Source of the DNA: Mobula birostris
Lineage: Eukaryota
NCBI RefSeq assembly: GCF_030028105.1
Contig: NC_092371.1
Coordinates: forward strand, 97,305,064 to 97,369,063
Direction: 5' to 3'
Length of the DNA: 64,000 nucleotides
The position numbers were made by a program, and so were the translations under genes. Below, piece by piece: positions 5,788-64,000 of the stretch. Under the pieces are notes generated by a model that ran no database searches, was not told the DNA's origin, and was given only the letters and a program-made list of their open reading frames with translations. Position 1 is the stretch's first letter; each line of letters starts with the position of its first letter.

Positions 5788-6274
5788 GTCCCATTTATTT
5801 TCCACCAGTTTAATATTAAAAGGAAAACCGAGGCATGGGTTTGCGTATTCAGCTTGTTTTATTTTAAAATTATTTTCCCACTTTAATGTTTTCTTTTATT
5901 ATTACTATTATTTGTCTGTTTAGATTCAAATTGAATCGCTTGCTTCAAATATCTCAATTGACTGTTGCAGAGAGTTGAAAATAACATTGGCAACTGGAAA
6001 TCCGGCATAGCCCTCCGGAAACGGGGCCTCTGGTCTGATCTCTATTCGGATTCTTCTTTGCCCTGCTAGTTAGCTGTCGGCGTTGGTGGTGGGATCACTA
6101 ATCAGAGCATTCCAATCGGAGAAAAATAATCGCGACTGGCCGGGCTACGGGACGTCCAGGTGGCTCATGAATGATTCCTAAATTCTCTAGTTCTATGAAT
6201 ACTGCAAAAACCACGAGCGCAAAAATGACTAAATGCCTAAGCCACGGAGCATGTTTATTATTATTACTTAAAGT

Positions 6275-7910
6275 GTATTTTCCTTCAGCATTTACCAAGG
6301 AAAACAATATGGAGGGCAAGGAAATTAGTGCTGAGTGCATAAATGCGTTAGGGCGTTCCGAGTTCAAGGGGGAGGAAGTGTTGGGCATCCTAAAGTGTAT
6401 TAACGTGGGTAAATCCCCAGTGTCTGGTGGGATTTACCCCAGATTATTGAAAGAGGCAAAATCCGTGATTGAGGGGGCATTGACCAGTACCGTCCTGTCC
6501 TCTCTAGACAGAGGCGAGGTCCCGGGGGACTGGGGTGTAGCTAAAGTTGTACATCTATTTACGAAGGGAACAAGGGAAAATCCTGGGGAACTATAGACCA
6601 GTGATTCTCACGTCAGCTGTAGGGAAATTGGTGGAGAAAATCATTAGGAATAGGGAATGTGAGCACTTGGAAACTCACGACCCTCTTAGGGAGAGCTAAC
6701 GTGGCTCTGTGTGGAGCAGGTCCTGTATTATCAACTTGGGGGTGTTTTTGACAAGGTGACGAGAGAGATTGATGAGGTTAGGGCAGTAGATGTTGGTTGC
6801 ATAGATTTTAGTAAGGCGTTTGACAAAGTCTGTCCTGGGAGACTAATATTTAAGATGCATGGGGTCCGTGATGAATTGGCTGTTTGGATTCAGAACTGAC
6901 TTGCACAACGGATAGTGGTTGAAGGGATATAATCAAGATGGACGGCTGTAATTACTGGTGCTTCGCGGGGATTTGTCGTGGGACCTCTGCCGTTTGTGAT
7001 GTACATGAATGACATAGATGCAGATGTAGGTGGCCATGTTAGTAAGTTTGCGGATGATATTAAGATTGGTGGAGTTGTGGATGGTGTAGAAGACTGGCAA
7101 AGATACACTGTACTATAGATCATTTGCCAATATGGGTAGAGAAATGGCAGGTGGGATTTAACCCAAATAAATGTGCGGTGTTACACTTCGGTTGTGGAAA
7201 CGCTAGGAAACTGTACACTATTAAGGGCAAGATGCTTAGCAGTGGGATCCAAATTCATAGCTCTTTGAAAGTGGTTACATAGGTCGATAGGGTGGTTGAA
7301 AGGCTTATGGAATGTTTGTTTCTAATAGCCGAGGTATTGAGTTCAAAAGTCAAGGGGTTATGTTGCAATTTTATAAAACTCTGGTTAGGTCACATCTTGA
7401 GTACGCATTGCATACCGTTCTGGTTGTCACACTGTAGGAAGAATGTTGAGGCTTTGGCGAGGGTGCTGAAGAAGTTTAGAGGGCAAGGGCATCATGTAAG
7501 GATGAATAAATTGCTTTGTTTCCTCTGGAATAGCGGTGGCTGAAGGGAGATATGCTAGAGATTTATTAGTTTATGAGAGGGATAGACAGTATAGACAGTC
7601 CGTATCTGTCTCCCAGGATTAAATTGTCCAATACCAGAAAGCATGCATTGAAGTTGAGGGGGTATAAGTTCAATTGGGTTGTGAGGGGTATTTTTCTTTA
7701 CTCAGAGAGTTGTGGATGTATGGAATGCTCTGCCTGATATGGTGGAAGATGCAAATGCATTAGAGGGTTTGAAGAGCCGTTTGGATAGGCACAGGGATGC
7801 TATGAAGATGGAGGGATATGGACATTGCGTTAGTAGAATGGATCAGTATTTGGGTGTTTATGATTTACTTTTTAGCTGGTTCGGCACAGCATTATGCTGT
7901 AGTGTTCTAT
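6275..7910 (+). mobile_element. Degenerate CR1 LINE ORF2 fragment
   Basis: Peptides GKSPVSGGIYPRLLKEA, VPGDWGVAKVVHLFTKG and DFSKAFDKV; CR1 3' tail near 7870-7910. Confidence 0.8.
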
Positions 7911-9158: not shown

Positions 9159-9239
9159 TCAGATGTCGGGCATTAATAACTTTCGGTTCGTTTATTGTTT
9201 CAATTTTTAAATATGAGTCACTCTCCGTCACTTAGAGAA

Positions 9240-12200
9240 GACAGCCCTGGTGCCACATACGCCAGCCTATCCGGTGATATCCTAATTCTGTGCGACCTCC
9301 CCATCCCTTCATGTAACTCTTCAGGTTCAGACACTACTGGGGATACTTCTGGTCTACCTGGCGAGGCAACTCGGCTGTCCACAGGTAGCCACACCTTCCC
9401 CTCACCCCCCCCCCCCCACATTTCACCTGACTGACTGAGCGGAAGAAGGGCTGGAAGTCTCTTCCTCAGACAATGGGGAGATAGCCAAAGGTAACATATA
9501 CCACACATCCAGGTTCTCATCCTCCGAATCAGTATTCCTCTCAGGGGTGGGGGCCGGTCTAACCTCTCCTGCTGTGGGCCCTGCAGTTGTTCCGCGTTTC
9601 TGCAGCATCTTCTTACCAGGTATAAGTTCCAAGTCGGGCTCTGGGTCTACCTGCACCTCTTGTCCCAGGGGCAGCAGGTGGTTCCGATGGAGAATATTGA
9701 CAGGCCCATTCCCATCCTCTGATTTCACCGGGAAAACTAGTATTGGCATTTGACTCTCCACCATTCAGGACTTAGGCGCCCAGCAGTCCGCCAACTTACG
9801 TTCCCAGGTAGTCCCAAATTCCTTATGAAGTCCCGGTTTCCTGGCAGGAGCTGGGAGAACCTCACCTTTTGATCATACCTCCTCTTATTTCCTTGATTCT
9901 GCTTGGCCGTCGCGACCCCAGCTAATTCATAAGCCCTTTTTAGCTCTTTTCTCATGTCAGACAGATACTTCAGTTAAATCTTCAGTGGGAAGTAGTTAAA
10001 TCTTCAGTGGGAAGTAGCCCTCGTCAGTCCAAAAACAAAGGTTAATGAGCAACTTCGCCTTGCGCAAAAACATGAGCGAGTACCCGGTAGCTTCATTTCA
10101 GGCACAGTTGGAGCTGTGGACCAGGAGTCCAATATGTTGACTCCACCTGCTCTTCTTGCTGATCTCCAAGGTTCCGAGCACATCTAGCAAGGTCGATTAA
10201 ACCTCTCGGGCTAGGGATCACCCTTCCGATGATAGGGCGTGGTCCTCGACTTCTCGATTCCAAGCATGCCCAGTAACACTTGGATGAGTCTGCTCTCGAA
10301 ATCCCGTCCCTGATCACTATATATCTGCCTGGGAAGGTCATAATAAATGAAATACTTCACCCATTACACTTTGCCACCGTAGACGCCCTCTGGTCTTTGG
10401 TAGGAAAAGCCTGAGCATGTCTAATGTAGTGGTCCATGAAGACTAAGAGCTTCGCCGTGTTGCTGGCATCGGGCTCAATTAGCAGGAAATCCATACACAC
10501 CAGGTCCAGGGGCTCCACACTCTGCAAGTGGGACAAGGGAGCTGCCAGCGTAGGCAGCTTTCCGTTTTATGCATCGAACACACGACTTGCAGTATTCTTC
10601 AACTTCCATCTTCATTCGGGGCCAGTAAAACCGGTCTCTGAGCAACCCAAAGGTCTTTTCGACCCCCAAATGTCCAGAATCATCATGAAGTGACGCGAAC
10701 GGAACCCTCCAATACTTCGCCGGCAGAACCAACTGGCAAGGCCGAGGTTGGCCCGGTGGTGACGAGACCCAGTCCGGGATCTGGTTCCGCAACTCCAGCC
10801 GAGGCCATTCTCTCAGTAATGGGGGCACCATCGCATGGTTTGTCTTCTCTGCCTGAGCAATGTCTCTCTTTTCGACCGCTGACCAAATGGTACCGATGCG
10901 TGTCTCGTCTCGCTGAGCAGCTGCCAGTTCCCCAGAGCTCAATTCCGGCAGTTGATGTGTCTTCGGAGCAGCCAGGTTACAGTAAGCTTGGAGAATCGCT
11001 TTATGTGAAGCTCCCAATTGATCCACCGCTAAATCTTGCCTCTCCTTTCCTTCTGCCTTCACGGTGATGTCAAACTGACATATGACCTTCACTCCCGAGG
11101 CAGGAATGTTCTCCCATTCCTCGTCCCTGACCAGTCCCTCATGCACCCGTCTGGACAAAGCATCAACATCAATATTGCTGCTTCCTGGCCGGTACCTCAG
11201 GCTGAAATCATAGGCAGACAACGCTGCCAACTACAGATGGCCTGTGGCATCCATTTTCGCCGAGGTCAGGAGGTAAGTTAGGGGGCTGTTGTCCGTCCTC
11301 AGCTCAAACTTAGTCCCGTAGCAGTTGTCACTCAGCTTATCCACCACAGCCCATTTCAATGCCGGATATTCCAATGTGCATGGGATAGTTTTTCTCGGAG
11401 GGCAACAGACTCCGGCTGACAAATGCAACGGGACTCCGATCCTGATACAGGACGCCAGCTAAGCCCTCTCGGCTGGTATCCGTGTGCAGTACATACGGCA
11501 ATCAGGGGTCTGCAAAAGCTAGAACCAGCGCCTGGGTCAACTGCTCTTTCAGCGACTGAAAGGCCTTCTCACATTTTGCATCCCACCTCGGTCCAAAGAG
11601 CTTGAACGGGCTAAGATACTATCAACACTCCTGTCATCCTCCCCCCCCCCCCCCAACCTTTCTTCCCCAAGGGAGGGTAATCGCACAGAAGCTGATTCAA
11701 CGGGTGACTTTCGCGTAGCCATTAACGAACCTCTTGATAGTAACCAAAGAACCCGAGGAACGAGTGCACAGCGCTCACAGTCTGGGGTCTTGGCCAAGTC
11801 ATCACTGCCTCTAGCTTAGCCGGATTTGTAACTACTCCGTCTATGAGACTATGTGCCCAACATAGCTAACAGACGTTTGGCAGAACTGGCACTTGTCCAG
11901 GGAAGGTTTTATCCCTTCAGATTTCAAGCGGCCCAGCACCTTCAGCAGCCTCGCTTCATGTTCTTCCAAGGTGGATCCAAACACTATAAGGTCATCTAGA
12001 CACACCAATACCTCAAGCAAGTTCATATCCCCTACCGTCTTCTCCATGACCCGCTGGAAGGTTGCAGCGGATCCCAATATGCCCCGGGGAATTCTTTCGA
12101 ACTGGGAAAATCCCAGGGGACATATAAATACCGTCTTCACTTCGTTGGTCTCACTCATGGGGATCGGGTAATATCCACTCCTCAAGTCTAGCACACTAAA

Positions 12201-12860
12201 CCACTTCGCAACACTCAGGCAGGCCAGCGCGGTCTTCAATCCTCGCGACCATATACCGGTCAGGGTCCTATAGTCCACACACGTCCGTACCTTCTTATTC
12301 TTCTTTCCGGCCACTACTATTGCGGACGCATAGGGGTTTCGGCACTCGGTGATGATCCCAGCTTCTTTTAAATTACGCAAATGCTGCCGAACATCTGCAA
12401 GGGCCGGCCTCCACGACGACTCTCTAAACGGGGTGTATTCGGTCACCCTAATAGTGTGACGAGTGCTCTTTAAACAACCCACATAAAACTCGTCAGTGCA
12501 AAAGACATCTTCTAGCTTGAACATCTTCTCTACCAACCTTCTGTTCCAACCCGCCGGAACCGAGGAGTCCTCGACGTTGAGTGACTCTCAGCGGTCAACT
12601 TTCCCCTTTTTTCAATAGTTTCCCCCCGGCTTGTCTCACAATGTCACTGGACATTACCGTCGCCGGGAACAGATGCGCCAGCGGCATCCCCCGCTTGAAG
12701 GTGACCTCCTTCTTCATAGCGTTCCTGACAATCACTGCCACCCTGATCGCCTGTACCATTGAATTATACTCCGGGTTACCGATGCTACTGTTGTGGTGAA
12801 TTTCACCAGAAGCCTACAGACTGTCAACACCGAAACTCCAACTGCCAAGCTTGCCAAGAG
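9240..12860 (-). mobile_element. Degenerate Ty3/Gypsy pol (RT-RNaseH-integrase)
   Basis: RT motifs WFSVLDLRSGYYPI and LVCLDDLIVFG; RNaseH ALKWAVVDKL..FELRTDNSPLTY; integrase Zn finger HDDSGHLG..CKSC. Many frameshifts, including a 22-bp tandem duplication at 9972-10015. LTRs not identified. Confidence 0.88.
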
Positions 12861-48500: not shown

Positions 48501-49059
48501 GCATTTTCTGCCACATCCAAACTCCTAAACCGCCATGAATACCGCTGTAAACCTCGCCTGCGTGTTTAGGCACTGCCATTAAGCAATAGCGCTGAAAGCT
48601 GATTTGGGTTGTTGAGGTGGTTGGGGTAAAGAGCACCTATGCTTTCTCACACTTTTCCCGCAAAATAAACTATCGGCTGCGAGAAGGAGTTATATCATTG
48701 CACAGCTTATAATTTGGCTTCATTTTACGCCTGGTTATATTTAACGCCGTTATCTTCTCTGACATATTGAAGTAGTGTTTCAATGTGCCATATCATCCGA
48801 CCCATACACCGGCAATTTATTGCTCCCTGAAAGAAAGTTGGCATATTGGCAACTTCTTTCCAATCACTGAGCCACTGATTTCCAGCGAGAGTCTTGAGAA
48901 GGGACAGAGGTGTCTTGCGCCCTTGGGCCCCGGGGGATTGGGACTAATTCATTGTTAGTATTTGCAAGATCCCTGCGATTTTTCAAAGAAACGCAAAATC
49001 TATATTCTTTCTTAAACCTAGCTAACAGCACTTTCATGTACACTATATTCACCTGCTTA

Positions 49060-52000
49060 TTGAGATGACGGAGGAAAAAAAAACACTATTGGGAAACGTT
49101 GAAGAACATACTTCTATTTTTAGTTACAGTGGAGAAAGACGTGAAGGTTTCACAAATTGAAATAGTTAGTGGGGAAGTCTTGTGGAAAGCTCGCATCACA
49201 GTAGAAGAGGTGTTGGACGTCTTAAAATGAGTGCAGGTAAATAAACCTCCGGGCTCCTGATCAGGTATCTGTATATCCAAGAATATTGTGGAAGCTAGAG
49301 CAGAAATTGTGAGAGCCGTGGCTGAGGTATTTTCATCGTCGTTAGTGTCGGCTGAAGAACTGGATGTCATGGTCCGGTCCGTGAAATCCGCATTCTGGTT
49401 CACGGTCCGGCCCAGGTTCCTTATTCCAGATTTTCCGGTTTCCCCCAGTTTCTGTTGAGGCAGCTGATTCTCGCTTGTGCTGGCTTCATAAGTAGCTTCA
49501 GGATTCAGCCTCTGGCTGCTGGATTGTTCCTCTCCATACCCCCTGTCTGAATTCCTTCTCTGCCCCTTCTTCCTGAAGTCTTGCCATGCCCCTGCAACCT
49601 GTGTCTGAAGCCTTGCCTCGTCTGAAGCCTGGCTTCGCCTTGCCTCATCTGAAGCCTTGCCTCGCCTTGCCTCGCCTGTAACCCTCAGCTGCACTGCTGT
49701 CTACTTCAATCGCCGCAGCAAGATAAGGAACTGTCTATCGTTGTTTTGAACTGCCTCTGTGTCCACGCCTTCGCTAGGTAGGTCCAGCCATCTGCCGCTG
49801 CCTTGTGTTGCGAACCGTCTCGTCGTATTCTGCATTCTATGTAATGAGTCCCGGCCCTAAGTCCTGTACCCAAGAAGGGGTCCCGCTCTGTGTTCTGTGT
49901 ATGAGTTCTGGCCCTACGTCCTGTTTCCAAGGAGGGGTTCCGTCTCTGTGTTCCATGTTCCTGTCTCTCCCTCGTTTTTGTCTTTTCCATGTGTCTCGTC
50001 CAGCCCAGAAGTACCTTGCCCAGCCGGTTGCTGGGGTTCCATCGGCCTGTGTTGGGGTTCCCTTGTCCAGTCCAGGAGTCTCACGTCCAGTCCTGTTGAG
50101 TCTTCTTATCCTGTAGCCACGTCTTGCCCTCGCCTATTTCTGGAGTCCGAGCCCGAGTCAAGTCTCAGGTTTGGGTCCTTGTCCAGTCTATGGCTCGGAG
50201 TCCAACTCCAGGCTCCTAGTTCCAAGTTCCATGTCCTGGTTCCGCTATCCTAGTCAAGTCCTAGCTCAGGCCCTGTATCCTTGTCGTGTCCAGGGTCTGT
50301 GTCATGTCCAGCGTCCTTTCTTCCCCACTTCCCTTGCTTCCTTGACATGCCTAGTCCTGTTCCTAGTGCTACAGTGTCTGTGTCTTGCAGTTGGGTCCGT
50401 TCCCAGCTGCCCCCTTATGACAGAACAATCCAGCCAGACTTGGACCTAGCGCACAGACACTGTCGTTTAACTCTCACTATCCTGGGTCCTCTCCTGTTGA
50501 ATGTCCCCCATCCCCCACCCGCCTGTGTCGTCCATAGTCTGGGGAAGCCTTTTGGGTCGCCAGAAGGCTCCTATAGAGCGGGGGGTGTTATCATGGTCCG
50601 GTCCATGAAATCTGCATTCCGGTTCATGGTCCGGTCCAGGCTCCTTATTCCAGGTTTTCCGGTTTTCCTCAGTTTCTGTTGAGGCAACTGATTCTCGCTT
50701 GTGCTGGCTTCATAAATAGCTTCAGGATTCAGTCTCTGGTTGCTGGATTGTTTCTGTCCATACCCCCTGTCTGAATCCCTTCTCTGCCTCTTACTCCTGA
50801 AGTATTGCTATGCCCCTGCAACCTGTGTATGAAGCCTTGCTTCATCTGAAGACTTCCCTTGCCTTGCCTCGTCTAAAGCCTTGCCTCGCCTTGCCGCGTC
50901 TGAAGCCTTGCCTCGCCTCTAACCCTCGCCTGCATCGCTGTCTAGTTCAATCACCGGAGCAAGATAAGGAACTGTCTATCGTCGTTTTGAACTGTCTCTG
51001 TGTCCACACCTTCACTAGTTAGGTCCAGCCGTTTGCCAGTACCTAGTGTTGGGAACCGTCTGTGTCCACGCCTTCACTAGGTAGGGCCGGCCGTCTGCCG
51101 CTGCCTTGTGTTGGGAACTGTCTCGTATTTTGCATTCCGCATATTGAGTCCCGGCCCTACGTCCTGTTTCCAAGAAGGGATCCTGGCTCTGTGTTCCACG
51201 TTGCTGTCTCTCCCTCGACCAAGGCTCTGCGTTCTTGTCTCTCCCTCGACCTAGTCAAGGCTTCCGGGTCTTGTCCAGTCCTAGCCATGATCCAAGAACC
51301 TTGGCCTGTCCAAGCCATGGCTTTGTTTTCTTGTCTTGTCCATGTGTTTTCCCCAGCCCAGGAGTACCTTGCCCAGCCCGGTGCTGGGGTTCCCTCGTCC
51401 TGTACTGAGATTCCCTAGTCCTGTCCAGGAGTCTCACGTCCAGTCCTGTTGCCTCTCCTCGTCCTGTAGCCATGCCTTGTTCTCGCCTAGTTCTGGAGTC
51501 TGAGCCCGAGTCAAGTCCCAGGTTCAGGGTCCTTGCCCAGTCTCTGGCTCGGAGTCCATACCCAAGCGTCGAAGAACCGAAGCTGCGTCATGTCTTTGCC
51601 TAGATCCCGGGTCCGAGACCAAGTCAAGACCCAGGTTTCGGGTCCTTGTCCAGTCTCTGGTTCGTAGTCCAAGTCCAGGCTCCTAGTCCCAAGTTCTGTG
51701 TCCTGGTTCCGCTCTCCTAGTCAAGTCATAGACCAGGTTCTGTATACTTACCTCCTCCAGGGTCTGTGTCATGTCTGGCGTCCTTTCTTCCCCACTTCCC
51801 TTGCTTCCTTGTCACGCCTAGTCCTGTTCCTAATGCTTCTGTGTCTGTGTTTTGCATTTGGGTCCGCTACCAGCCGCCCCCTTATGACACTGGAAGACTG
51901 GAGGGTGGCTAATTTTGTGCCTTTATTTAACAAAGGCTGTGGAGAAAAAACTGTAGATTACGCCAATTCCATAGCGCAGTAAACCTGCATCAGTGGTAGT

Positions 52001-52164
52001 GAAGTTACTGGAGGAAATTCTAATGGATAAGTTATATGTACGTGCTTTTGGAAAGGCAGCATTGCTTTGTTCGTGGGAGATCATATTTCACGAATTGAAT
52101 TGAGATTTTTGAAGAGGTAACCAAGAATGTCGGTGAGTGCAGAAGGGTAGATATTGTCTATGTC
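49060..52164 (+). mobile_element. CR1 fragment interrupted by the LTR element at 49365-51889
   Basis: CR1 sequence reads continuously across the insertion: ..gctgaagaactgga | agactggagggtggctaat.. (EDWRVAN). Confidence 0.75.
49365..51889 (+). mobile_element. Non-autonomous Gypsy (Tf1/sushi-like) LTR element: two LTRs with an internal region of about 165 bp
   Basis: 5' LTR TGTCA..TGACA at 49365-50422; primer site 50423-50434; purine tract agagcgggggg at about 50575-50585; 3' LTR from about 50589 to 51889 ending TGACA; exact TSD CTGGA at 49360-49364 and 51890-51894. Confidence 0.9.
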
Positions 52165-52780
52165 TGTCATGAGCCCTGCGGGTCTGTGCAGTTGTATTCA
52201 TTAATTGTTGCCTTGTCTGGAGTCACGAAGCCATTGGACTTTCTGTTTAAACTTGTCAAGTTTATTTTGACTGGCATGGGTTTTCCACATACTCTGATTA
52301 TTTAAGGCAGGCTCCCAATTAGCGCTTACTGTGGCCGCTTGTGTGTTGAGAATGATTCGTCTTGTGGTGTCCCTTAGTAAAACCACTGATATTGTGATTG
52401 AATTAGCATGAATAAACTCTTGTTTCTGTCTCTACATGGGAGTGTCCACACCTGGGTTCAGTCATGTGACTGTGCACATTGTGACAGTCGGACCCCGCCA
52501 TAAATGGACCCAGAGGAGGTTCGACAGCACTTCAGACATCTGCCAGCAGAAGGCGAGGATGCCTTCTATTCTCTGTGTTCATCCCAAGGCTATCTTCCGA
52601 GCTTCTCGAGTACATGTTGGAAGTCCACGCTCCCAGCATCTCTCGTTTACGTTCAAGGTCATCAAGGTTTCCCAGGCCTCCCATGGCCCTCCAGGTTTCC
52701 AAGGACTATTAGAAGTTCCAGAGTTCAGTTTCATGCCCAGAAAAGATTCGCAAAGATGTTACAGGGACTTCATGCTTGAG
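52165..52780 (+). mobile_element. Gypsy LTR (52165-52486) plus gag start
   Basis: TGTCA..TGACA, then gtcggaccccgcca and ATGGACCCAGAG (MDPEEVRQH..). Confidence 0.65.
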
Positions 52781-54221: not shown

Positions 54222-54962
54222 GACCATAAGACAAAGGAGCAGAGGTCGGCCATTCGGCCCATCGAGTCTGCTCCGCCATTTTATCATGACCTGATCCATT
54301 CTCCCATTTAGTCCCACTCTCCCGCCTTCTCACCATAACCTTTGATGCCCTGGCTACTCAGATACCTATCAATCTCTGCCTTAAATACACCCAATGACTT
54401 GGCCTCCACGGCTGCCCGTGGCCACAAATTCCATAGATTCACCACACTCTGGCTAAAAAAATGTCTTCGCATCTCTGTTCTGAATGGGCGCCCTTCAATC
54501 CTTAAGTCATGCCCTCTTGTACTAGACTCCCCCATCATGGGAAAGAACTTTGCCACATCAACTCTGTCCATGCCTTTCAACTTTCGAAATGCTTCTATGA
54601 GGTCTCCCCTCATTCTTCTAAACTCGAAGGAATACAGTTCAAGAGCGGACAAACGTTCCTCATATGTTAACCCTCTCATTCCCGGAATCATTCTAGTGAA
54701 TCTTCTCTGTACCCTCTCCAAATTCAGCACATCCTTTCTTAAATAAGGAGCCCAAAATTGCCCACAGTACTCCAAGTGAGGTCTTACCAGTGCCTTATAG
54801 AGCCTCAACATCATATCCCTTCCACTATACGCTATTCCTCTAGAAATAAATGCCAACATTGCATTCGCCTTCTTCACCACCGACTCAACCTGAAGGTTAA
54901 CCTTAAGGGTATCCTGTACGAGGACTCCTAAGTCCCGTTGCATCTCAGAACTTTGAATTCTC
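54222..54962 (-). mobile_element. 5'-truncated CR1 LINE
   Basis: Open RT C-terminus LYKALVRPHLEYCGQFWAP..; (accataag)n tail. Confidence 0.9.
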
Positions 54963-55120
54963 TCCCCAAGTCGTACCTGTCTCAATGGAATCCTCCTCCT
55001 GGGCATTCTGTCCTTGGAAACTACCCCTTCCCTTTCCCCCTTTCTTGAATATGCTGTAGTTTCCAAACGTTTTGCCATCTTATCCTTTGTTTCAACGCAC
55101 ATAAATCAGGATTTCACCAG

Positions 55121-56129: not shown

Positions 56130-57720
56130 ACATTTATGTGATGACAGCATCAACCGGAGTGTAGCTCCAGAGCCACGAAAATCCTGCACCCTTAAGGTGC
56201 ACTAGTCTTCTAGGCCACGTCCTTGGCAGATCTAAAAGCGGCCAGACGTGAGGCCCTGAGAGCGGGTCCCATTCCCGCAAAGAACCAATGACAGTGTGTA
56301 ACTCCAGGTCTTCGAAGAACCCTGAAAAGGGAAAAAAAATATTAAAGATAGAAATGGAGCTGTTTCCGAAGATACAAACAAAAGAGTCGCCGGTAGGCGT
56401 CATCAGCCTAAGCTCTGCCCTCAGCTCAGATTCACGTGAATTGCTGCTGGTGCTTGGCCTCCTCTGGTTATCCCGACATAACCCACGGATTGATTGGTCC
56501 CTTAAAGCACTCCACGAGTGGGGACTGACTTGACTCTGTACCTGTATGGGTCGAGTTCAAGCTCCAGCCCGCGGATCCTCTCTTGTGTCAAACACTGATG
56601 TGGATCTATCCGGCCTTCAGGCTGAATACGCTGACCTTGTTGAGTTCTTCAATGAAAAGAAGGCCACCTTCCTGCCTCCACACCGGTCATGTGACTGAAC
56701 CTTTGAAATCTTACTCGGTACTAGTCCTCCGAGGAGCTGGCTCTTTTCTCTTTCTCTCTCTCCCAGAAACGGTGTCCATGGAGGAGTACATCAAGGAGGC
56801 ATTGATCTTGGGGTTTATCTGTCAGTCAAGCTCGCCAGCAGGATTGGGCTAATTTTTTTGTGAGCAGGAAAGATGGCAGACTCCGTCCCTGCATTGATAT
56901 GCCCCCCAAACATATCACTATGAAGAACTCCTACCCTCTTCCCCTGCTTGCCTCTGCGTTCAGACATCTCCGGGAGGAGTCAATTTTTCCAAGATAGGCA
57001 TGCGCAATGCTTGTTACCTTGTTCGTATCAGAGAAAGAGTTGAGTGGAAGGCAGATATCAGCACCTCCACTGACAGCTGTGACTACCTTGTGATGCCCTT
57101 TGGACTGGCCAGCGCCGCCGTTGCTTTTCGGGCCCATGTACGATGTGCTCAGGGATATGTTGAATCGGTGCGTTTTGGTAAATTTGGACGACATTCTGAT
57201 CTTTTCCCGCTCCCACCGGTAACACGTCCAGCATGTCCGGAGCGTTCTCAAACTGCTCCTCGAGAATAACCTGTACGCCAAGCCAGAGAAGTGTGAGTTC
57301 TATAAAGACCAGGTGCCATTTTTGGGGTATATACTTACCACGTCTAGTGTTCAAAGGGATGAAGTTCAGGTGGTCACGGAGTGATCCAGACCATCTACAG
57401 TCAAACAACTGTGACGCTTTATGGGGTTTGTGAGCTTTTATCATGGCTTCATGCAAAATTTTAGCTCTATCGCAGCACCGATAATTGCACTCACCTGGAA
57501 GACCTCTGCAGGACTTCATTGGACAAACGAAGTAGACTGAGCATTCTCGGAGCTAAAGCGACGCTTTACCACTGCCCCAATGCTGCAACGCCTAGATCAT
57601 TCATTGTCAAGTTAGATGCATCCGATGTCGGCATCACAGCTGTCTCTCTCAGCGATCTTCTGCGGATAGTCGGCTGCACCCTCGTGCCATTGTTTCCCGT
57701 TTCTTAATTTTGGCTAAGAG
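56130..57720 (+). mobile_element. Sushi/Tf2-like Gypsy gag-pol relic (protease, RT, RNaseH start)
   Basis: Frameshifted RNACYLVRIRE, YLVMPFGLA, NLYAKPEKCEFYKDQVPFLGYI and FIVKLDASDVG. Confidence 0.8.
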
Positions 57721-57899
57721 CAACTACGGCCAGGGACACTTAGACCCAGAGAAAGTCCTGAGACCCGGGGCAAGCGTTGAGTGCGGAAATGGCCTTGAAT
57801 TTAGACGTAAGGGAAGCTCGGAACGTAGACTCGAGGCATTCGAAACATAAACTCGAAACTTGGACTTGAGAATAGATGGCATTCTCACCCAAAGCCGAA

Positions 57900-58459
57900 C
57901 GATGGCAAAAGGCTACTGTTCAAATTCCCGCGGGTCCATTAATTGGCGGGATCCTTCTGTCATGATGTGCGCTGGCATTGCGGAGGAAAGACAGACTCTG
58001 ATGTTGGCGCAGTGAGAAAAGTTTATTTGTAACAATTCCAACAGAACATCGGTGCCTCGGCCGAACGACACCACGAGGCGTAACATTCTCAAAACTAAGA
58101 CCCCATGGTTAGCGCTAATCGGGTATCCACTTAATACCAGCAATGCGGAAACCTGGAACCTATCAAAATGAAATGAACAAGATGAAACAGAAAGCACCAG
58201 GAGACCGCATTACAAAGAGCGGGTCACTCGAGGAAAACCAAGGAATGGTAAACGATTAATGACCCACTTTAAACAACAATTAACAAATGCACGTTCCCTT
58301 AAAACCTTGGAGACCTCAATGCTCTCCAGGTACCTATGTTGCAATGAGCGAATGAAGTGAACCCAGGTGAAGGACACAGGCACGGAGATTGAGTTAGGAT
58401 GCTTACGCAGACGTGAACGTTGGACAGCAAGTAAGAGGGATCTTGACATGAAGCCTTAA
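57900..58459 (-). mobile_element. Gypsy LTR plus gag start, minus strand
   Basis: Minus: TGTTA.. LTR ..TGACA, then gaaggatcccgcca and ATGGACCCG; LTR start uncertain. Confidence 0.5.
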
Positions 58460-58739
58460 CACAGAGAGAAAGAGATTCATAGGTAAATCTTTAAACTGGA
58501 GCAAAACTTAGAATGCACGGTCCTAAGCGGCCGTGAAACATTAGTTACCACACAGGAAAAACCAACGATCTGGGGACTAGTGGTTGTAACGCCGGGGTTC
58601 TTATGGTGCAGTCTGGATGGAAACTAGGTGTGTCGTCATCAAAGAGAATTAGAAGCAAATGGGAAATTAACGGTCAGAACCGTGGCACAATCAAAGCAAA
58701 TTAGGAGAAAGATATGGAGTAACGATCTAGACCGTCAGT

Positions 58740-58942
58740 GCATTCCCTCGCCCCCCCCACCCCCGCAACTGGAGCCTCCAGGCGAACCACCGGTCTTGTC
58801 CGCATTCTCCCGATGGAAATCGCGGAGCAGGGGAGGGTCCAGGATGAAGGAGCGGGGAATCCAGGAGCGTTCCTCCATGTCGTATCCCTTCCAATCGACC
58901 AGGTACTGGAGACCCCTGCCTCGGAGGCGCACATCCAGTATT
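58740..58942 (-). mobile_element. Chromovirus integrase chromodomain end and polypurine tract
   Basis: [36 protein letters not shown] followed by a G-rich tract. Confidence 0.8.
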
Positions 58943-61900
58943 CATAGAATATAGAACATAGAATAGAACAACACAGTACAGGCCCTTCGGCCCACAGTGT
59001 TGTGCCGACCCTCAAACCTTGCCTCCCATATAAGCTCCCACCTTAAATTCCTCCATATACCTGTGTAGTAGTCTCTTAAACTTCACTAGTGTATTTGCCT
59101 CCACCACTGACTCAGGCAGTGCATTCCACGCACCAACACTCTCTGAGTAAAAAACCTTCCTCTAATATCCCCCTTGAACTTCCCACCCCTTACCTTAAAA
59201 CCATGTCCTCTTGTATTAAGCAGTGGTGCCCTGGGGAAGAGGCGCTGGCTATCCACTCTATCTATTCCTCTTATTATCTTGTACACCTCTATCATGTCTC
59301 CTCTCATCCTCCTTCTCTCCAAGATTAAGCTCCCTTAATCTCTGATCATAATGCATACTCTCTAAACCAGGCAGCATCCTGGTAAATCTCCTCTGTACCC
59401 TTTCCAATGCTTCCACATCCTTCCTATAGTGAGGTGACCAGAACTGGACACAGTACTCCAAGTGTGGCCTAACCAGAGTTTTATAGAGCTGCATCATTAC
59501 ATCGCGACTCTTAAACTCTATCCCTCGAGTTATGAAAGCTAACATCCCATAAGCATTCTTAACTACCCTATCCAGCTGTGAGGCAACTTTCAGGGATCTG
59601 TGGACATGTACCCCGAGATCCCGCTGTTCCTCCACACTACCAAGTATCCTGTCATTTACTTTGTACTCTGCCTTGGAGTTTGTCCTTCCACAGTATATTA
59701 CCTCACACTTCTCCGGCTTGAATTCTATCTGCCACTTCTCAGCCCTCTTCTGCATCCTATCAATGTCTCTCTGTAATCTTTGACAATCCTCTACACTATC
59801 TACAACAGCACCAACCTTTGTGTCGTCTGCAAACTTGCCAACCCACCCTTCTACCCCTCACATCCAGGTCGGTAATAAAAATCACGAAAAGTAGAGGTCC
59901 CAGAACAGATCCTTGTGGGACACCACTAGTCACAATCCTCCAATCTGAATGTACTCCCTCCACCACCACCCTCTGCCTTCTGCAGGCAAGCCAATTCTGA
60001 ATCCACCTGGCCAAAATTTCCTGGATCCCATGCCTTGTAATTTTCTGAATAAGCCTACTGTGTGGAACCTTGTCAAATGCCTTACTAAAATCCATATAGA
60101 TCACATCCACTACACTACCCTCATCCATATGCCTGGTCACCTCCTCAAAGAACTCTATCAGGCTTGTTAGACACGATCTGCCCTTCACAAAGCCATGCTA
60201 ACTGTCCCTGAACAGACCATAATTCTCTAAATGCTTATAGATCCTACCTCTAAGAAACTTTTCCAACAGTTTTCCCACCGCAGACGTAAGGCTCACTGGT
60301 CTATAATTACCCGGACTATCCCTACTATCTATTTTGAACAAGGGGACAACATTCGCCTCCCTCCCATCCTCCGGTACCATTCCCGTGGACATCGAGGGCA
60401 TTAAAATCCTGCCAGAGGCTCAGCAATCTCTTCTCTCGCCTCGTGGAGCAGTCCGGGGAATATTCCATCAGGCCCCGGGGACTTATCTGTCCTAATGTAT
60501 TTTAACAACTCCAACACCTCCTCTCCCTCAATATCAACATGCTCCAGAACATCAACCTCACTCATATTGTCCTCACCATCATCAAGTTCCCTCTCATTGG
60601 TGAATACCGAACAGAAGTATTCATTGAGGACCTCACTCACTTCCACAGCCTCCAGGCACATCTTCCCGCCTTTATCTCTAATCGGTCGTTCCTTCACTCC
60701 TGTCATCCTTTTTTTCTTCACATAATTGAAGAATGCCTTGGAGTTTTCCTTTACCCTATTCGCCAAGAGCTTCTCATGTCCCCTTCTTGCTCTTCTCAGC
60801 CCCTTCTTAAGCCCCTTTCTTGCTTCCCTATATTCCTCAATGGACCCATCTGATCCTTGCTTCCTAAACCTCATGTATGCCGCCTTCTTCCACCTGACTA
60901 GATTTTCCACCTCACTTGTCACCCATGGTTCCTTCACCCTATCATTCTTTATCTTCCTCACCGGGCCAAATTTATCCCTAACATCCCGCAAGAGATCTGT
61001 AAACATCGACCACATGTCCATAGTACATTTCTCTGCAAAAACATCATCCCATTTCACACCCGCAAGTTCTAGCCTTCTAGCCTCATAATTTGCCTTTCCT
61101 CAATTGAAAATTTTCCTGTCGTCTCTGATTCTATCCTTTTCCATGATAATGCTAAAGGCCAGGAAGCGGTGGTCACTGTCCCCCAGATGCTCACCCATTG
61201 AGAGATCTGTGACCTGACCCGGTTCATTACCTAGTACTAGATCTAGTATGGCATTCCCCCTGGTCAGCCTGTCCAAATACTGTGACAAGAATCCGTCCTG
61301 GACACACTTAACAAATTCTGCCCCATCTAAACCCTTGGAACTAATCAGGTGCCAATCAATATTAGGGAAGTTAAAGTCACCCATGATAACAAATCTGTCA
61401 TTTTTGCACCTTTCCAAAATCTGCCTCCCAATCTGCTCCTCTATCTCTGCTGCTACCAAGGGGCCTATAGAATACCCCCCAATAGAGTAACTGCTCCCTT
61501 CCTGTTCCTGACTTCCACCCATATTGACTCAAAAGAGGATCCTGCTACATTACCCACCCTTTCTGCAGCTATAATAGTATCCCTGACCAGTAATGCCTCC
61601 CCTCCTCCCCTTTTTCCGCCCTCTCTATCCCTTTTAAAGCAGTGAAATCCAGGAATATTGAGAATCCATTTCTGCCCTGGTGTCAGCCTAGTCTCTGTAA
61701 TGGCCACTACGTCATAATTCCATGTATGTATCCAAGCTGTCAGTTCATCACCTTTGTTCCTGATGCTTCTTGCATTGAGGTACACACATTTCAGCCCTTC
61801 TACCTTCCTGTCTTTACGCCGTTTATTCTGCTTCTCTTTCCTCAAAGCCTCTCTATATGTTAGATCTGGCTTTACTCCACGCACTTCTTTCACTGCTCTA

Positions 61901-62969
61901 TCGCTCATGGTCCCATCCCCCTCGCAAATTAGTTTAAACCCTCCCGAACCATGCTAGCAAACCTACCTGCAAGGATATTGCTCCCCCTCGAGTTCAGGTT
62001 CAACGCATCCAACATGTACAGGTCCTACCTTCCCCAGAAGAGATCCCAATGATCCAAAAATCTAAAACCCTGCCCCCTGCACCAACTCCTCAGCCACGCA
62101 TTCAACTGTCATCTTCCCCAATTCTTACCATCACTGACACGTAGCTCTGGCAGCAATCCTGAGAACGCCACCCTTGAGGTCCTGTTCTTCAGCCTTCTGC
62201 CTAGTTCCCGAAACTCACACTTCAGGACCTCATCCCTCTTCCTGCCTATGTCGTTGGTCCCAACATGTATCACGACTTCTGGTTGCTTTCCCTCTCGTAC
62301 CAGGATGTCGTGCACCCGGTCAGAGACATTCCGGACCCTGGCACCCGGGAGGCAAAAAAGCATGCGGATGTCCTTCTCACGTCCACAAAATCTCCTGTCT
62401 GCTCCCCTGACTATAGAGTCTCCAATGACGACAGCTTTCCTCTTCTCCGTCCCACCCTTCTGCACCACAGGGTCAGGCTCAGTGCCGGAAGCCCTGCCAC
62501 CGTGGCTCACACCTGGTCGGTCGTCCCTGCGGACAGTATCCAGGACAGTAAACTTATTATTCAGGGGAATGGCTACAGGGGTGCTCTGCACTACCTGTCT
62601 GCTTACCTTCGCTTTCCCCCCTCTGACTGTCACCCAACGACCTGCTTCCGACAGCCTAGGTGTGACTACCTCCCTGTAGCTCTCATCTATGACTGCCTCA
62701 TTCTCCCTTATGAGTCGAAGGTCATCCAGCTGCTGCTCCAGATTCCGTACACGGTCTTCCAGATCGCCCAGCCGTATGCACTTCTGGCAGATGTGACTCT
62801 GCGGGAGAGGGGAGTTCCCCCAAGACTGCCACATCTCACGTGAGAGGCACATCACCGTCTCAGGAGACATTGTAAAAACTAACTGCGAGCAAGCTTGTCC
62901 TCCGCCTCTTCTCGTCGAGGTCTCTCGAGTCAAAGCCTCAAAGCTCCACTCCTTCACTGGCCCACTCAC
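58943..62969 (-). mobile_element. Near full-length CR1 LINE (5' UTR, ORF1 Zn-finger/esterase, ORF2 EN-RT, tail), inactivated
   Basis: ORF1 ATG at 62870 (MSPETVMC..HICQKC..GDSIVRG..HVGTND); EN YLNARSIRNKGDEL and GDFNFP; [15 protein letters not shown] and [10 protein letters not shown]; (catagaa)n tail; multiple stops and frameshifts. Confidence 0.93.
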
Positions 62970-64000
62970 GCACGGATGGTGTACGCTGGATGGTCGTCAA
63001 TGAACCGGGCGGGAGGTGGGATTCGGCGGGAGGGCACAAAGATATAGGTTTCAATTGGGCGACGTGAAACGCGTGATGAATGTGCGTGGATCCGGGCTGT
63101 TTGAGTCTGACCACCGAGGGGCTGATGACACTCTCAACAATCTCGAATGGTCCCAGGTAGCGAGGTGCGAGTTTCTTGGGTTCATTCTTGATGGGGATGT
63201 ATCTTGCCGAGAGCCAAACCTTCTGCTCAGGCCGATAATTTGGTGCAGGAATTCGGCGGCGATCGGCAATCCTCCGGTTGCTGTCGGCTGATCGGAGCAG
63301 GGCCGCGCGTGCATCCTTCCAGATCTTGTGGCACCGGCGAAGATGGGCCTGAACAGAAGGCACAGCAATGCCATCTTCACGAGCAGGAAACAGAGGGTGT
63401 TGATAACCGAGGGAGCATTCGAAGGGAGACATTCCGGTGGCGGTGCTGACCAGGGAGATGAGGGCGTACTCGACCCAAACGAGATGGGTGCTCCAGGATG
63501 CCGGGCTGTTGGCGGTTATGCAGCGCAATGCTGCTTCCAAATCCTGGTTTGTTCGTTCTGTTTGACCATTACTCTGCGGATGGAAGCCGGAAGACAGGTT
63601 TATTGAGACTCCAAGGGCTTAACAAAAGGATCTCCTGACTTGAGAGATGAATTGGGGGCCCCGGTCAGAAATAATGTCAGAGGGATTTCCATGAAGGGGA
63701 AGACGTGATGAACAAAGGGGTCGGCTGTCTCACGGGATGTAAGGAGTTTGGGAAGGCCTACGAAGTGCACAGCTTTGGCGAAGCGACCCACCACGGTGAG
63801 TACGGCAGTGTTCCTATGTGAAGGGGGTAGTCCAGTACCGAAATCCAGCGCAATATGAGACCAAGGGCGGCTAGGGACAGGTAGGCGACGAAGCAACCCA
63901 GCAGGTGGTCGGTGGGAGGCTTTTCCGCGGGTACAAACAGAACAGGCAGAGACGAAGGAACGGGTGTCAGCATCCATGGAGGGCCACCAGAAATGTCTCT
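62970..64000 (-). mobile_element. Chromovirus (sushi-like) integrase
   Basis: [18 protein letters not shown] and [17 protein letters not shown]; continuous with 58740-58942 once the CR1 is removed. Confidence 0.85.

What the first reader, a model, noticed from the sequence alone, without database searches (positions are those of the whole stretch)
49365..51889. Non-autonomous two-LTR element with an apparent self-priming site and a perfect TSD
Seen: instead of a TGG-type tRNA primer site, the 12 nt after the 5' LTR (GAACAATCCAGC, 50423-50434) are the exact reverse complement of LTR bases 49518-49529; pairing extends to 16 nt with a 3-nt bulge. That target lies about 25-30 nt after a TATA-like CATAAGTA (CATAAATA in the 3' LTR), where a transcript would start. 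The internal region is only about 165 bp yet keeps primer site and purine tract, and the CTGGA TSD shows the unit integrated in this form. Known: Tf1/sushi elements self-prime this way. Inference: a TRIM/LARD-like parasite with LTRs over 1 kb, mobilised in trans.
Basis: partly seen in the sequence, partly recalled or inferred. Interest (0 to 1): 0.7.

Follow-up and report, generated by a model that had tools for sequence, protein, structure and literature searches.

The report
Protein-less self-priming LTR retrotransposon copy
This is an old copy of an abundant ray jumping element that has two 1-kb repeats, no genes, and a start signal for DNA copying that matches its own RNA rather than a tRNA; that priming trick is already known from Tf1/sushi elements, so this is a tidy new example and not a new mechanism.

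Summary
There are two direct LTRs, 49365-50422 and 50586-51889, with TG..CA ends and about 87% identity. A perfect 5-bp duplication (CTGGA) flanks them. The internal part is 163 bp, has no ORF and ends in a purine tract.

- **Insertion site:** it is exact. Removing the element restores a LINE reverse-transcriptase motif.
- **Primer site:** the 12 nt after the 5' LTR are the exact reverse complement of LTR bases 49518-49529. Those bases start 30 nt after a TATA-like box. Chance gives this in about 2 of 10,000 trials.
- **No tRNA-type site** follows the LTR.
- **Copy number:** contigs of public runs from three related organisms show the LTR at very high depth. The short internal part sits at roughly 70-380 times the flank depth. 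At least one diverged contig spans LTR end, internal part and next LTR start. Hundreds of contigs end at the LTR edge in unrelated flanks. So the short form is a family, not a one-off deletion.

Best reading: a non-autonomous derivative of a Tf1/sushi-type chromovirus that self-primes and is moved by a partner's proteins.

Not shown here: the transcript start, covariation between primer site and target, and the partner.

The scan had already noted this family on other DNA of the same genome. It is a new member of a known kind, of modest interest.

The parts
49360..49364 (+). Left copy of the 5-bp target-site duplication, CTGGA
   Evidence: The flanks joined with one copy restore a LINE RT reading frame.
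49365..50422 (+). 5' LTR, 1058 bp, TGTCAT...ATGACA
   Evidence: Repeat and alignment results. Contig depth is 10^3-10^5 against 6-11 in the flanks.
49487..49494 (+). TATA-like box CATAAGTA. The family majority and the 3' LTR read CATAAATA.
   Evidence: At place 49492, G>A holds 94-99% of the depth in three runs.
49518..49529 (+). Proposed self-primer: the 12 nt GCTGGATTGTTC, inferred to be the first bases of the transcript
   Evidence: Exact reverse complement of 50423-50434. It starts 30 nt after the first A of the TATA-like box. T/G at -1/+1 is read from the sequence. The start site was not mapped.
50423..50434 (+). Primer binding site GAACAATCCAGC, directly after the 5' LTR and not of the TGG/tRNA type
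   Evidence: The 12-bp duplex is -18.8 kcal/mol, and the best partner anywhere in the LTR is this site. The MFE and centroid folds of 49518-50470 both pair it with nt 1-12.
50423..50585 (+). Internal domain, 163 bp, no ORF of its own and no Pfam match
   Evidence: Depth is 556/982/3436 in three runs against flanks of 6-18. A diverged contig spans 50329-50612.
50553..50584 (+). Possible remnant of the 3' end of a chromovirus pol gene (reads ..GSPEGSYRAGG..)
   Evidence: Local DNA similarity to the pol tail of the chromovirus at 58760-58789 (minus strand). Score 24, reached by 34 of 2000 shuffles and 21 of 2000 window pieces. This is weak.
50576..50585 (+). Polypurine tract GAGCGGGGGG, abutting the 3' LTR
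   Evidence: It fixes the element's orientation as the + strand.
50586..51889 (+). 3' LTR, 1304 bp. It holds CATAAATA at 50711-50718 and a target copy GCTGGATTGTTT at 50742-50753. It also has extra 62-bp, about 110-bp and 113-bp segments.
51890..51894 (+). Right copy of the target-site duplication, CTGGA
49000..49359 (+). Left flank: a decayed CR1-like LINE reverse-transcriptase gene, the insertion target. It continues at 51895-52300.
   Evidence: The joined flanks translate to ..SSLVSAEELEDWRVANFVPLFNKGCGE... This aligns colinearly and without a gap across the junction with the LINE copy at 6171-6596.

Best explanation
This is an old, dead copy of a multi-copy LTR retrotransposon family of rays that encodes no protein.

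It keeps only the cis signals needed for retrotransposition: two LTRs with integrase-recognition ends, a promoter, a primer binding site and a polypurine tract.

The inferred mechanism runs as follows.
1. RNA polymerase II starts about 30 nt after the LTR's TATA-like box, near 49518.
2. The first 12 bases of the RNA fold back, or pair with a second RNA, on the 12 complementary bases that directly follow the 5' LTR.
3. A partner element's RNase H cuts after base 12.
4. The freed 3' end primes minus-strand DNA synthesis, as in Tf1 and the vertebrate sushi group.
5. Gag, protease, RT/RNase H and integrase come in trans from an autonomous Tf1/sushi-type chromovirus.

Shown here: the element's anatomy, the exact insertion, the complementarity beyond chance, and the multi-copy status of the short form. 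Inferred: the transcript start, the cleavage, the priming and the trans-mobilisation.
For: - **Anatomy and duplication:**
- **Exact insertion:** removing the element restores a conserved LINE RT motif.
- **Complementarity:** 12 of 12, with p about 2e-4 by LTR shuffles and 0 of 7,000 control positions. It is the strongest partner of the primer site anywhere in the LTR. It closes the predicted MFE and centroid folds.
- **Position:** the target lies 30 nt after the TATA-like box in both LTRs. The alignment block that holds the box and target is among the best-kept of the LTR alignment (93%).
- **No tRNA-type site:** no TGG-type site follows the LTR. The element has no tRNA, 5S or ribozyme module.
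- **Family status:** LTR bins reach 10^3-10^5 depth against 6-11 in the flanks. The internal bin is 556/982/3436 in three organisms. Twelve, 11 and 9 distinct contigs carry a single variant at 50451. A 317-nt contig spans 50329-50612 with 36 differences and 12 gaps. Loose ends before 49365 number 310/328/181, with about 0.33 agreement, meaning many different flanks.
- **Literature:** Tf1's first 11 bases pair with its primer site and RNase H cuts between bases 11 and 12 (PMC7175516). Self-primers are described for the Tf1/sushi group in yeast and vertebrates (PMC6317226, refs 59-61; PMC4600332). Sushi-clade LTRs have an early TATA-like stretch and a late poly(A) signal, which implies a long R (PMC3601003). 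That fits a start at LTR base 154 of 1058.
- **Possible partner type nearby:** a sushi-like chromovirus lies in the same window. Its pol tail resembles the element's last 32 internal bases (weak).
Against: - No RNA reads were available, so the transcript start is unmapped.
- I could not fetch any other copy. Conservation and covariation of primer site and target therefore rest on one copy plus unchecked notes of this scan.
- Neither LTR has AATAAA or ATTAAA, so R and U5 cannot be delimited.
- Primer and primer site would be about 905 nt apart, which to my recollection is much further than in Tf1.
- The whole R-U5 fold is no more stable than shuffles (z -0.21).
- No autonomous partner with this LTR was found. 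The link to chromoviruses rests on a 32-nt similarity with p about 0.01.
Confidence: 0.65

Rival explanations
1. One-off internal deletion. A full-length coding element inserted here and later lost its gag-pol at this locus only, so the short form never moved.
For: The duplication is compatible with this. The last 32 internal bases look like a pol tail, so the family did arise by deletion at some point.
Against:: the internal 163 bp sit at about 70-380 times flank depth in three organisms. Many distinct contigs carry variants within it. A diverged contig spans LTR end, internal part and next LTR start.
Confidence: 0.04
2. Chance complementarity. The real primer is a tRNA, a tRNA fragment or another cellular RNA that binds elsewhere in the first 30-40 internal bases, for example at TGGACCTAGCGC, 18 nt after the LTR.
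For: A TGG-initiated stretch exists at 50441-50452. I had no ray tRNA set to compare, and the window holds no tRNA gene.
Against: A 12 of 12 match at the fixed position directly after the LTR has p about 2e-4. It also lies at the spacing from a TATA-like box expected for a transcript start. A primer site 18 nt from the LTR end would be unusually distant. The TGG stretch matches none of the vertebrate tRNA 3' ends I recall (from memory, not tested).
Confidence: 0.1
3. The complementarity is real and selected, but it serves RNA circularisation, dimerisation or packaging and not priming. Priming would then use another route.
For: The pairing closes a roughly 900-nt loop. Long-range 5'-3' pairings do serve packaging or dimerisation in retroelements (general knowledge).
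Against: The paired stretch occupies exactly the primer-binding position abutting U5, where minus-strand synthesis must start for correct LTR regeneration. No other candidate primer site is present. The same layout is experimentally tied to priming in Tf1 (PMC7175516).
Confidence: 0.1
4. The family spread by DNA-level duplication (segmental or tandem) and not by retrotransposition in trans.
For: Other notes of this scan report tandem LTR-internal-LTR arrays of similar mini-elements (unchecked).
Against: This copy has its own 5-bp duplication and a precise insertion into a LINE. Hundreds of contigs break into unrelated sequence exactly at the LTR edges.
Confidence: 0.05

Closest known systems
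Tf1 / Tf2 of Schizosaccharomyces pombe, and Tj1 of S. japonicus: self-priming Ty3/gypsy chromoviruses
   Same: No tRNA-type primer site. The bases directly after the 5' LTR complement a short stretch (11 nt in Tf1, 12 nt here) placed where the transcript begins (PMC7175516, PMC4600332). The duplication is 5 bp.
   Different: Those elements are autonomous (gag, PR, RT, IN), and their priming is shown by experiment. Their LTRs are a few hundred bp (from memory). Here there is no coding sequence, the LTRs are 1.06-1.3 kb, primer and primer site lie about 905 nt apart, and nothing has been tested at the bench.
Vertebrate Tf1/sushi-group chromoviruses (sushi-ichi and relatives; Butler et al. 2001, as cited in PMC6317226)
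   Same: Vertebrate host. Self-priming is predicted from primer-site to LTR complementarity. The LTR layout has an early TATA-like stretch and a long R (PMC3601003). A sushi-like chromovirus with a chromodomain and a Tf2-type integrase SH3 domain lies in the same window.
   Different: Those encode gag-pol. Sushi LTRs have a clear AATAAA near the 3' end, while this copy has none. Membership by RT/IN phylogeny cannot be tested for an element without genes.
TRIMs (terminal-repeat retrotransposons in miniature), including the Helenus, Ajax and Cassandra types
   Same: Two LTRs enclose a tiny internal domain that holds only a primer site and a purine tract. No ORF, a 5-bp duplication, multi-copy, presumed trans-mobilisation (PMC10886601).
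   Different: TRIMs are under 1000 bp overall with short LTRs and have tRNA-type primer sites. The TRIMp3 types carry tRNA- or 5S-like pol III promoters. This element is 2.5 kb with LTRs over 1 kb, has a self-complementary primer site and has no small-RNA module.
LARDs (large retrotransposon derivatives)
   Same: Non-coding, long LTRs, mobilised in trans (general knowledge).
   Different: LARDs have multi-kb conserved non-coding internal domains. Here the internal part is 163 bp.

Membership tests
LTR retrotransposon (structural class) | Two direct long terminal repeats with TG..CA ends and short inverted termini | tested here: met
   LTRs at 49365-50422 and 50586-51889, with TGTCAT..ATGACA ends and 87.5% identity in aligned blocks.
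LTR retrotransposon (structural class) | Target-site duplication of 4-6 bp and a precise insertion | tested here: met
   CTGGA on both sides. The empty site restores a LINE RT motif, colinear with a paralogous copy.
LTR retrotransposon (structural class) | Primer site after the 5' LTR and a purine tract before the 3' LTR | tested here: met
   GAACAATCCAGC at 50423-50434 and GAGCGGGGGG at 50576-50585.
Tf1/sushi-type self-priming elements | Primer site complementary to the element's own LTR and not to a tRNA 3' end | tested here: met
   12 of 12 exact, p about 2e-4. No TGG follows the LTR directly.
Tf1/sushi-type self-priming elements | The complementary stretch is the very 5' end of the transcript | not testable with these tools
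   Only contigs were available and no RNA holder was found. The only indirect support is the 30-nt spacing from the TATA-like box in both LTRs.
Tf1/sushi-type self-priming elements | RNase H cleavage after the paired stretch creates the primer | not testable with these tools
   This is a biochemical step, known for Tf1 (PMC7175516).
Tf1/sushi-type self-priming elements | RT/IN phylogeny within the Tf1/sushi chromovirus clade, with a chromodomain | tested here: inconclusive
   The element has no coding sequence. The only link is a 32-nt pol-tail-like remnant with p about 0.01.
Tf1/sushi-type self-priming elements | Primer site and target conserved or covarying across copies | not tested
   No second copy could be fetched. 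Earlier scan notes claim it, but I did not check them.
TRIM | Total length under about 1 kb, with short LTRs | tested here: not met
   2,525 bp in total, with LTRs of 1058 and 1304 bp. The criterion is from PMC10886601.
TRIM | Tiny non-coding internal domain with only a primer site and purine tract; multi-copy | tested here: met
   163 bp with no Pfam match. The internal bin is at about 70-380 times flank depth.
TRIMp3 (Cassandra / Helenus / Ajax) and retrozymes | A tRNA-like, 5S-like or hammerhead module inside the LTR | tested here: not met
   ARAGORN found no tRNA. Rfam at E up to 1 gave only one noise match.
LARD | Multi-kb non-coding internal domain | tested here: not met
   The internal domain is 163 bp.

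The most novel reading that the evidence does not exclude
Rays carry an abundant family of gene-less LTR elements that put all cis functions into a giant LTR (about 150 nt of U3 and about 900 nt of R-U5) plus about 160 internal bases. These elements prime reverse transcription with their own 5' end across a loop of about 900 nt. That would make them the first non-autonomous self-priming LTR family described, and a natural minimal substrate for defining what a vertebrate sushi-type machinery needs in cis.
Probability: 0.45. Interest if true: 0.45.

Novelty: new member of a known kind. Interest (0 to 1): 0.3.

Why it matters
Self-priming of reverse transcription has been shown by experiment only in fission-yeast elements. 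In vertebrates it is inferred from sequence.

A high-copy family without proteins that still keeps the signal tells us two things. The signal is a needed cis element, and a sushi-type machinery was active in rays and served parasites of its own.

The many copies would also allow a strong natural covariation test of the primer-to-primer-site pairing.

For genome annotation, it flags a repeat class (LTRs over 1 kb with an internal part of about 160 bp) that standard TRIM, LARD and tRNA-primer-site detectors would miss or label as solo LTR pairs.

It does not change how the mechanism is understood.

Tried and rejected
1. **Other copies in the window:** blastn of the element against all 64 kb found only itself.
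2. **Other copies through spurious ORFs:** the 133-aa ORF across the LTR-internal-LTR junction and the 92-aa ORF across LTR end plus primer site both gave no hit in the protein collection. That collection evidently holds no ORF calls from these repeats.
3. **Metagenome scan:** the 17-mer spanning LTR end and primer site gave 60 loci. None has any further similarity to the element, so all are chance matches.
4. **RNA evidence:** no run on record as RNA holds the stretch. The one 'RNA?' run laid is probably DNA, and contigs cannot show starts anyway.
5. **Poly(A) signal:** no AATAAA or ATTAAA in either LTR.
6. **Structured RNA modules or a pol III promoter:** none.
7. **Whole-leader fold stability:** not different from shuffles. 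Only the 12-bp closing helix is notable.
8. **Opposite orientation:** rejected. The minus strand would have neither a purine tract nor any primer-like site next to its LTRs (read).
9. **Orthologous insertion in organism B:** a contig of run X5 covers 49000-49393 with 5 differences. It reaches only 29 nt into the LTR, below the tool's 31-nt rule for bridging, so I do not count it.
10. **Original Tf1 papers:** PMC1369541, PMC109269 and PMC6388632 are not held.

No consensus of the family was built.

Full report
**1. What is there**

Window 49365-51889 is a two-LTR unit on the + strand.
- The 5' LTR runs 49365-50422 (1058 bp).
- The 3' LTR runs 50586-51889 (1304 bp). It starts TGTTATCATGG, where the 5' LTR has TGTCATGG.
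- Both end in ..CCCCCTTATGACA, giving TG..CA ends with a 6-bp inverted terminus.
- CTGGA flanks the unit on both sides.
- The LTRs are 84% identical over all aligned columns and 87.5% (K2P 0.14) where the alignment is sound. The 3' LTR carries three extra segments, partly internal duplications.

This is an old insertion.

The 163 bp between the LTRs hold no ORF of their own. ORFs that cross them have no Pfam match. The stretch ends in GAGCGGGGGG directly before the 3' LTR. That purine tract fixes the orientation: the opposite strand would offer neither a purine tract nor a primer-like site.

**2. The insertion is exact**

The flanks are a decayed CR1-like LINE. Joining them with a single CTGGA gives a continuous frame reading ..SSLVSAEELEDWRVANFVPLFNKGCGE... 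This aligns without a gap across the junction with another LINE copy of the window (6171-6596..SSLDRGEVPGDWGVAKVVHLFTKGTRE..). The boundaries and the 5-bp duplication are therefore real.

**3. The primer site**

The 12 bases after the 5' LTR (GAACAATCCAGC, 50423-50434) are the exact reverse complement of 49518-49529.
- A prefix match of 12 or more arose in 4 of 20,000 shuffles of the LTR, and in none of 7,000 control positions of the window.
- Among all LTR positions, this site gives the most stable duplex with the primer site. The 12-bp helix is -18.8 kcal/mol.
- When 49518-50470 is folded as RNA, both the minimum-energy and the centroid structures pair bases 1-12 with the primer site. The fold as a whole is no better than shuffles (z -0.21).
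- No TGG-type site follows the LTR. The first TGG lies 18 nt in.

The target starts exactly 30 nt after the first A of a TATA-like box: ATAAGTA in the 5' LTR and ATAAATA in the 3' LTR. A pyrimidine/purine step sits at -1/+1.

The 3' LTR copy of the target has one C>T. This still pairs as G:U. It is best read as a post-insertion change, because the primer site matches the 5' LTR version.

The alignment block that holds the box and target is among the best-kept of the LTR alignment (93%).

**4. A family, or a deletion at this locus?**

The window has no second copy. I laid Logan contigs of four public runs on 49000-52300 at 80% likeness. The runs came from three organisms, one of them the likely source species. 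Depth from contigs is not a copy number, but the contrasts are large.

| Region | Depth |
|---|---|
| Flanks | 6-18 |
| LTR bins | about 1,200 to 250,000 |
| Internal bin 50443-50553 | 556 / 982 / 3,436 (three DNA runs) |

- One variant alone, an inserted A after 50451, is carried by 12, 11 and 9 distinct contigs.
- A 317-nt contig of run X1 covers 50329-50612, that is LTR end, whole internal part and next LTR start. It has 36 differences and 12 gaps, so it is a different copy with the same short form.
- Contigs of the other two organisms cover most of the same span.
- 310, 328 and 181 contigs break off before 49365 into sequence with only about 0.33 agreement. Similar sets break off after the LTR end. 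These are many different insertion sites.
- At 49492 the family majority reads A (94-99% of depth). The family's box is therefore CATAAATA, as in the 3' LTR.

The perfect duplication by itself would not have shown that.

**5. What I could not test**

All runs are kept as contigs, and none is on record as RNA, so the transcript start is not mapped.

I could not obtain the sequence of any other copy.
- Two ORF-based searches found nothing.
- A metagenome scan with a 17-mer gave only chance matches.

Covariation of primer site and target is therefore untested here.

Notes of this scan on other windows of the same genome describe the same kind of mini-element. One follow-up states that the 12-nt complementarity holds in the family majority. 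I treat these as leads, not as support.

Neither LTR has AATAAA or ATTAAA, so R and U5 cannot be delimited.

**6. Origin**

The same window holds a sushi-like chromovirus on the minus strand.
- Its integrase has a Tf2-type SH3 domain at 62938-63977.
- A LINE insertion at about 59258-62969 splits it.
- It resumes with a chromodomain at 58738-58932 (Pfam Chromo, E 1.8e-7).
- It ends in a Gly-rich pol tail that runs into the purine tract and a 3' LTR.

The last 32 internal bases of the mini-element resemble that pol tail. The peptide reads GSPEGSYRAGG against [12 protein letters not shown]. The DNA local score is 24, reached by 1-2% of shuffles or random window pieces.

This is weak. It fits a mini-element that arose from a chromovirus by loss of everything between the leader and the last bases of pol. 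The two LTR families are unrelated at the DNA level, so this neighbour is not the partner.

**7. Comparison with what is known**

[quoted passage not shown] RNase H cuts between bases 11 and 12 to make the primer (PMC7175516).
- Self-primers are described or predicted for the Tf1/sushi group in fungi and vertebrates, and for some plant lineages (PMC6317226 citing Butler et al. 2001, Lin and Levin 1997, Atwood-Moore et al. 2006; PMC4600332).
- Sushi-clade LTRs were reported to have an early AT-rich, TATA-like stretch and a poly(A) signal close to the 3' end, meaning a long R (PMC3601003). A start at base 154 of a 1058-bp LTR fits that layout. The missing AATAAA does not.
- TRIMs are defined as under 1 kb and tRNA-primed. 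In animals they are reported from few groups (PMC10886601, PMC6934838). This element fails the size criterion, and it also fails the LARD criterion.
- It carries no pol III or ribozyme module.
- A full-text search found no paper describing a non-autonomous self-priming LTR element. Two papers hold all four search terms, and neither describes one.

**8. Verdict**

The reading as a non-autonomous LTR element with a Tf1/sushi-type self-priming signature is the best-supported one, at about 0.65 for the full mechanism. The anatomy and the family status are much more certain than that.

It is a new member of known kinds: self-priming chromovirus derivatives and internally deleted LTR elements. The same family had already been noted by this scan on other DNA of this genome. 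Interest is modest.

Noticed in passing
window 57957-58932 and 62938-63977, minus strand: A sushi-like chromovirus is split by a LINE insertion (about 59258-62969). Its parts are an integrase with a Tf2-type SH3 domain, a chromodomain (Pfam Chromo, 1.8e-7), a Gly-rich pol tail running into a G-rich purine tract, and then a 3' LTR of about 780 bp. That LTR has a CATAAGA box near base 135 and AATAAA about 65 nt from its end. Its 5' LTR and primer site lie beyond the window end, so self-priming could not be checked.
   Followed up: partly
window 56288-57900, + strand: A second Gypsy-type pol fragment (protease/RT motifs in several broken frames) abuts the chromovirus 3' LTR on the other strand. 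This is probably a nested insertion.
   Followed up: no
window 9200-12540, minus strand: A decayed Gypsy pol fragment (RVT_1 at 11844-12536, Integrase_H2C2 at 10478-11230) with no detectable LTR pair.
   Followed up: partly
window 49603-49678, 50834-50918, 49835-49958, 50997-51123: The LTRs contain short tandem repeats: a 27-nt unit (GCCTTGCCTCGTCTGAAGCC..) in 2.6-3.1 copies, and 57- to 62-nt units in 2 copies. Copy number differs between the two LTRs, and these lie downstream of the proposed start site.
   Followed up: no
window 54308-55102, 59258-61908, 6171-6596 and others: Many CR1-like LINE fragments with the shark/ray-typical RT C-terminus are present. The window is mostly nested retroelements.
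   Followed up: no
window 62112-62969, minus strand: A LINE ORF1-like protein gives weak GDSL-lipase/OSK-type matches (E about 5e-4, below the Pfam cut-offs). This may be an esterase-type ORF1.
   Followed up: no
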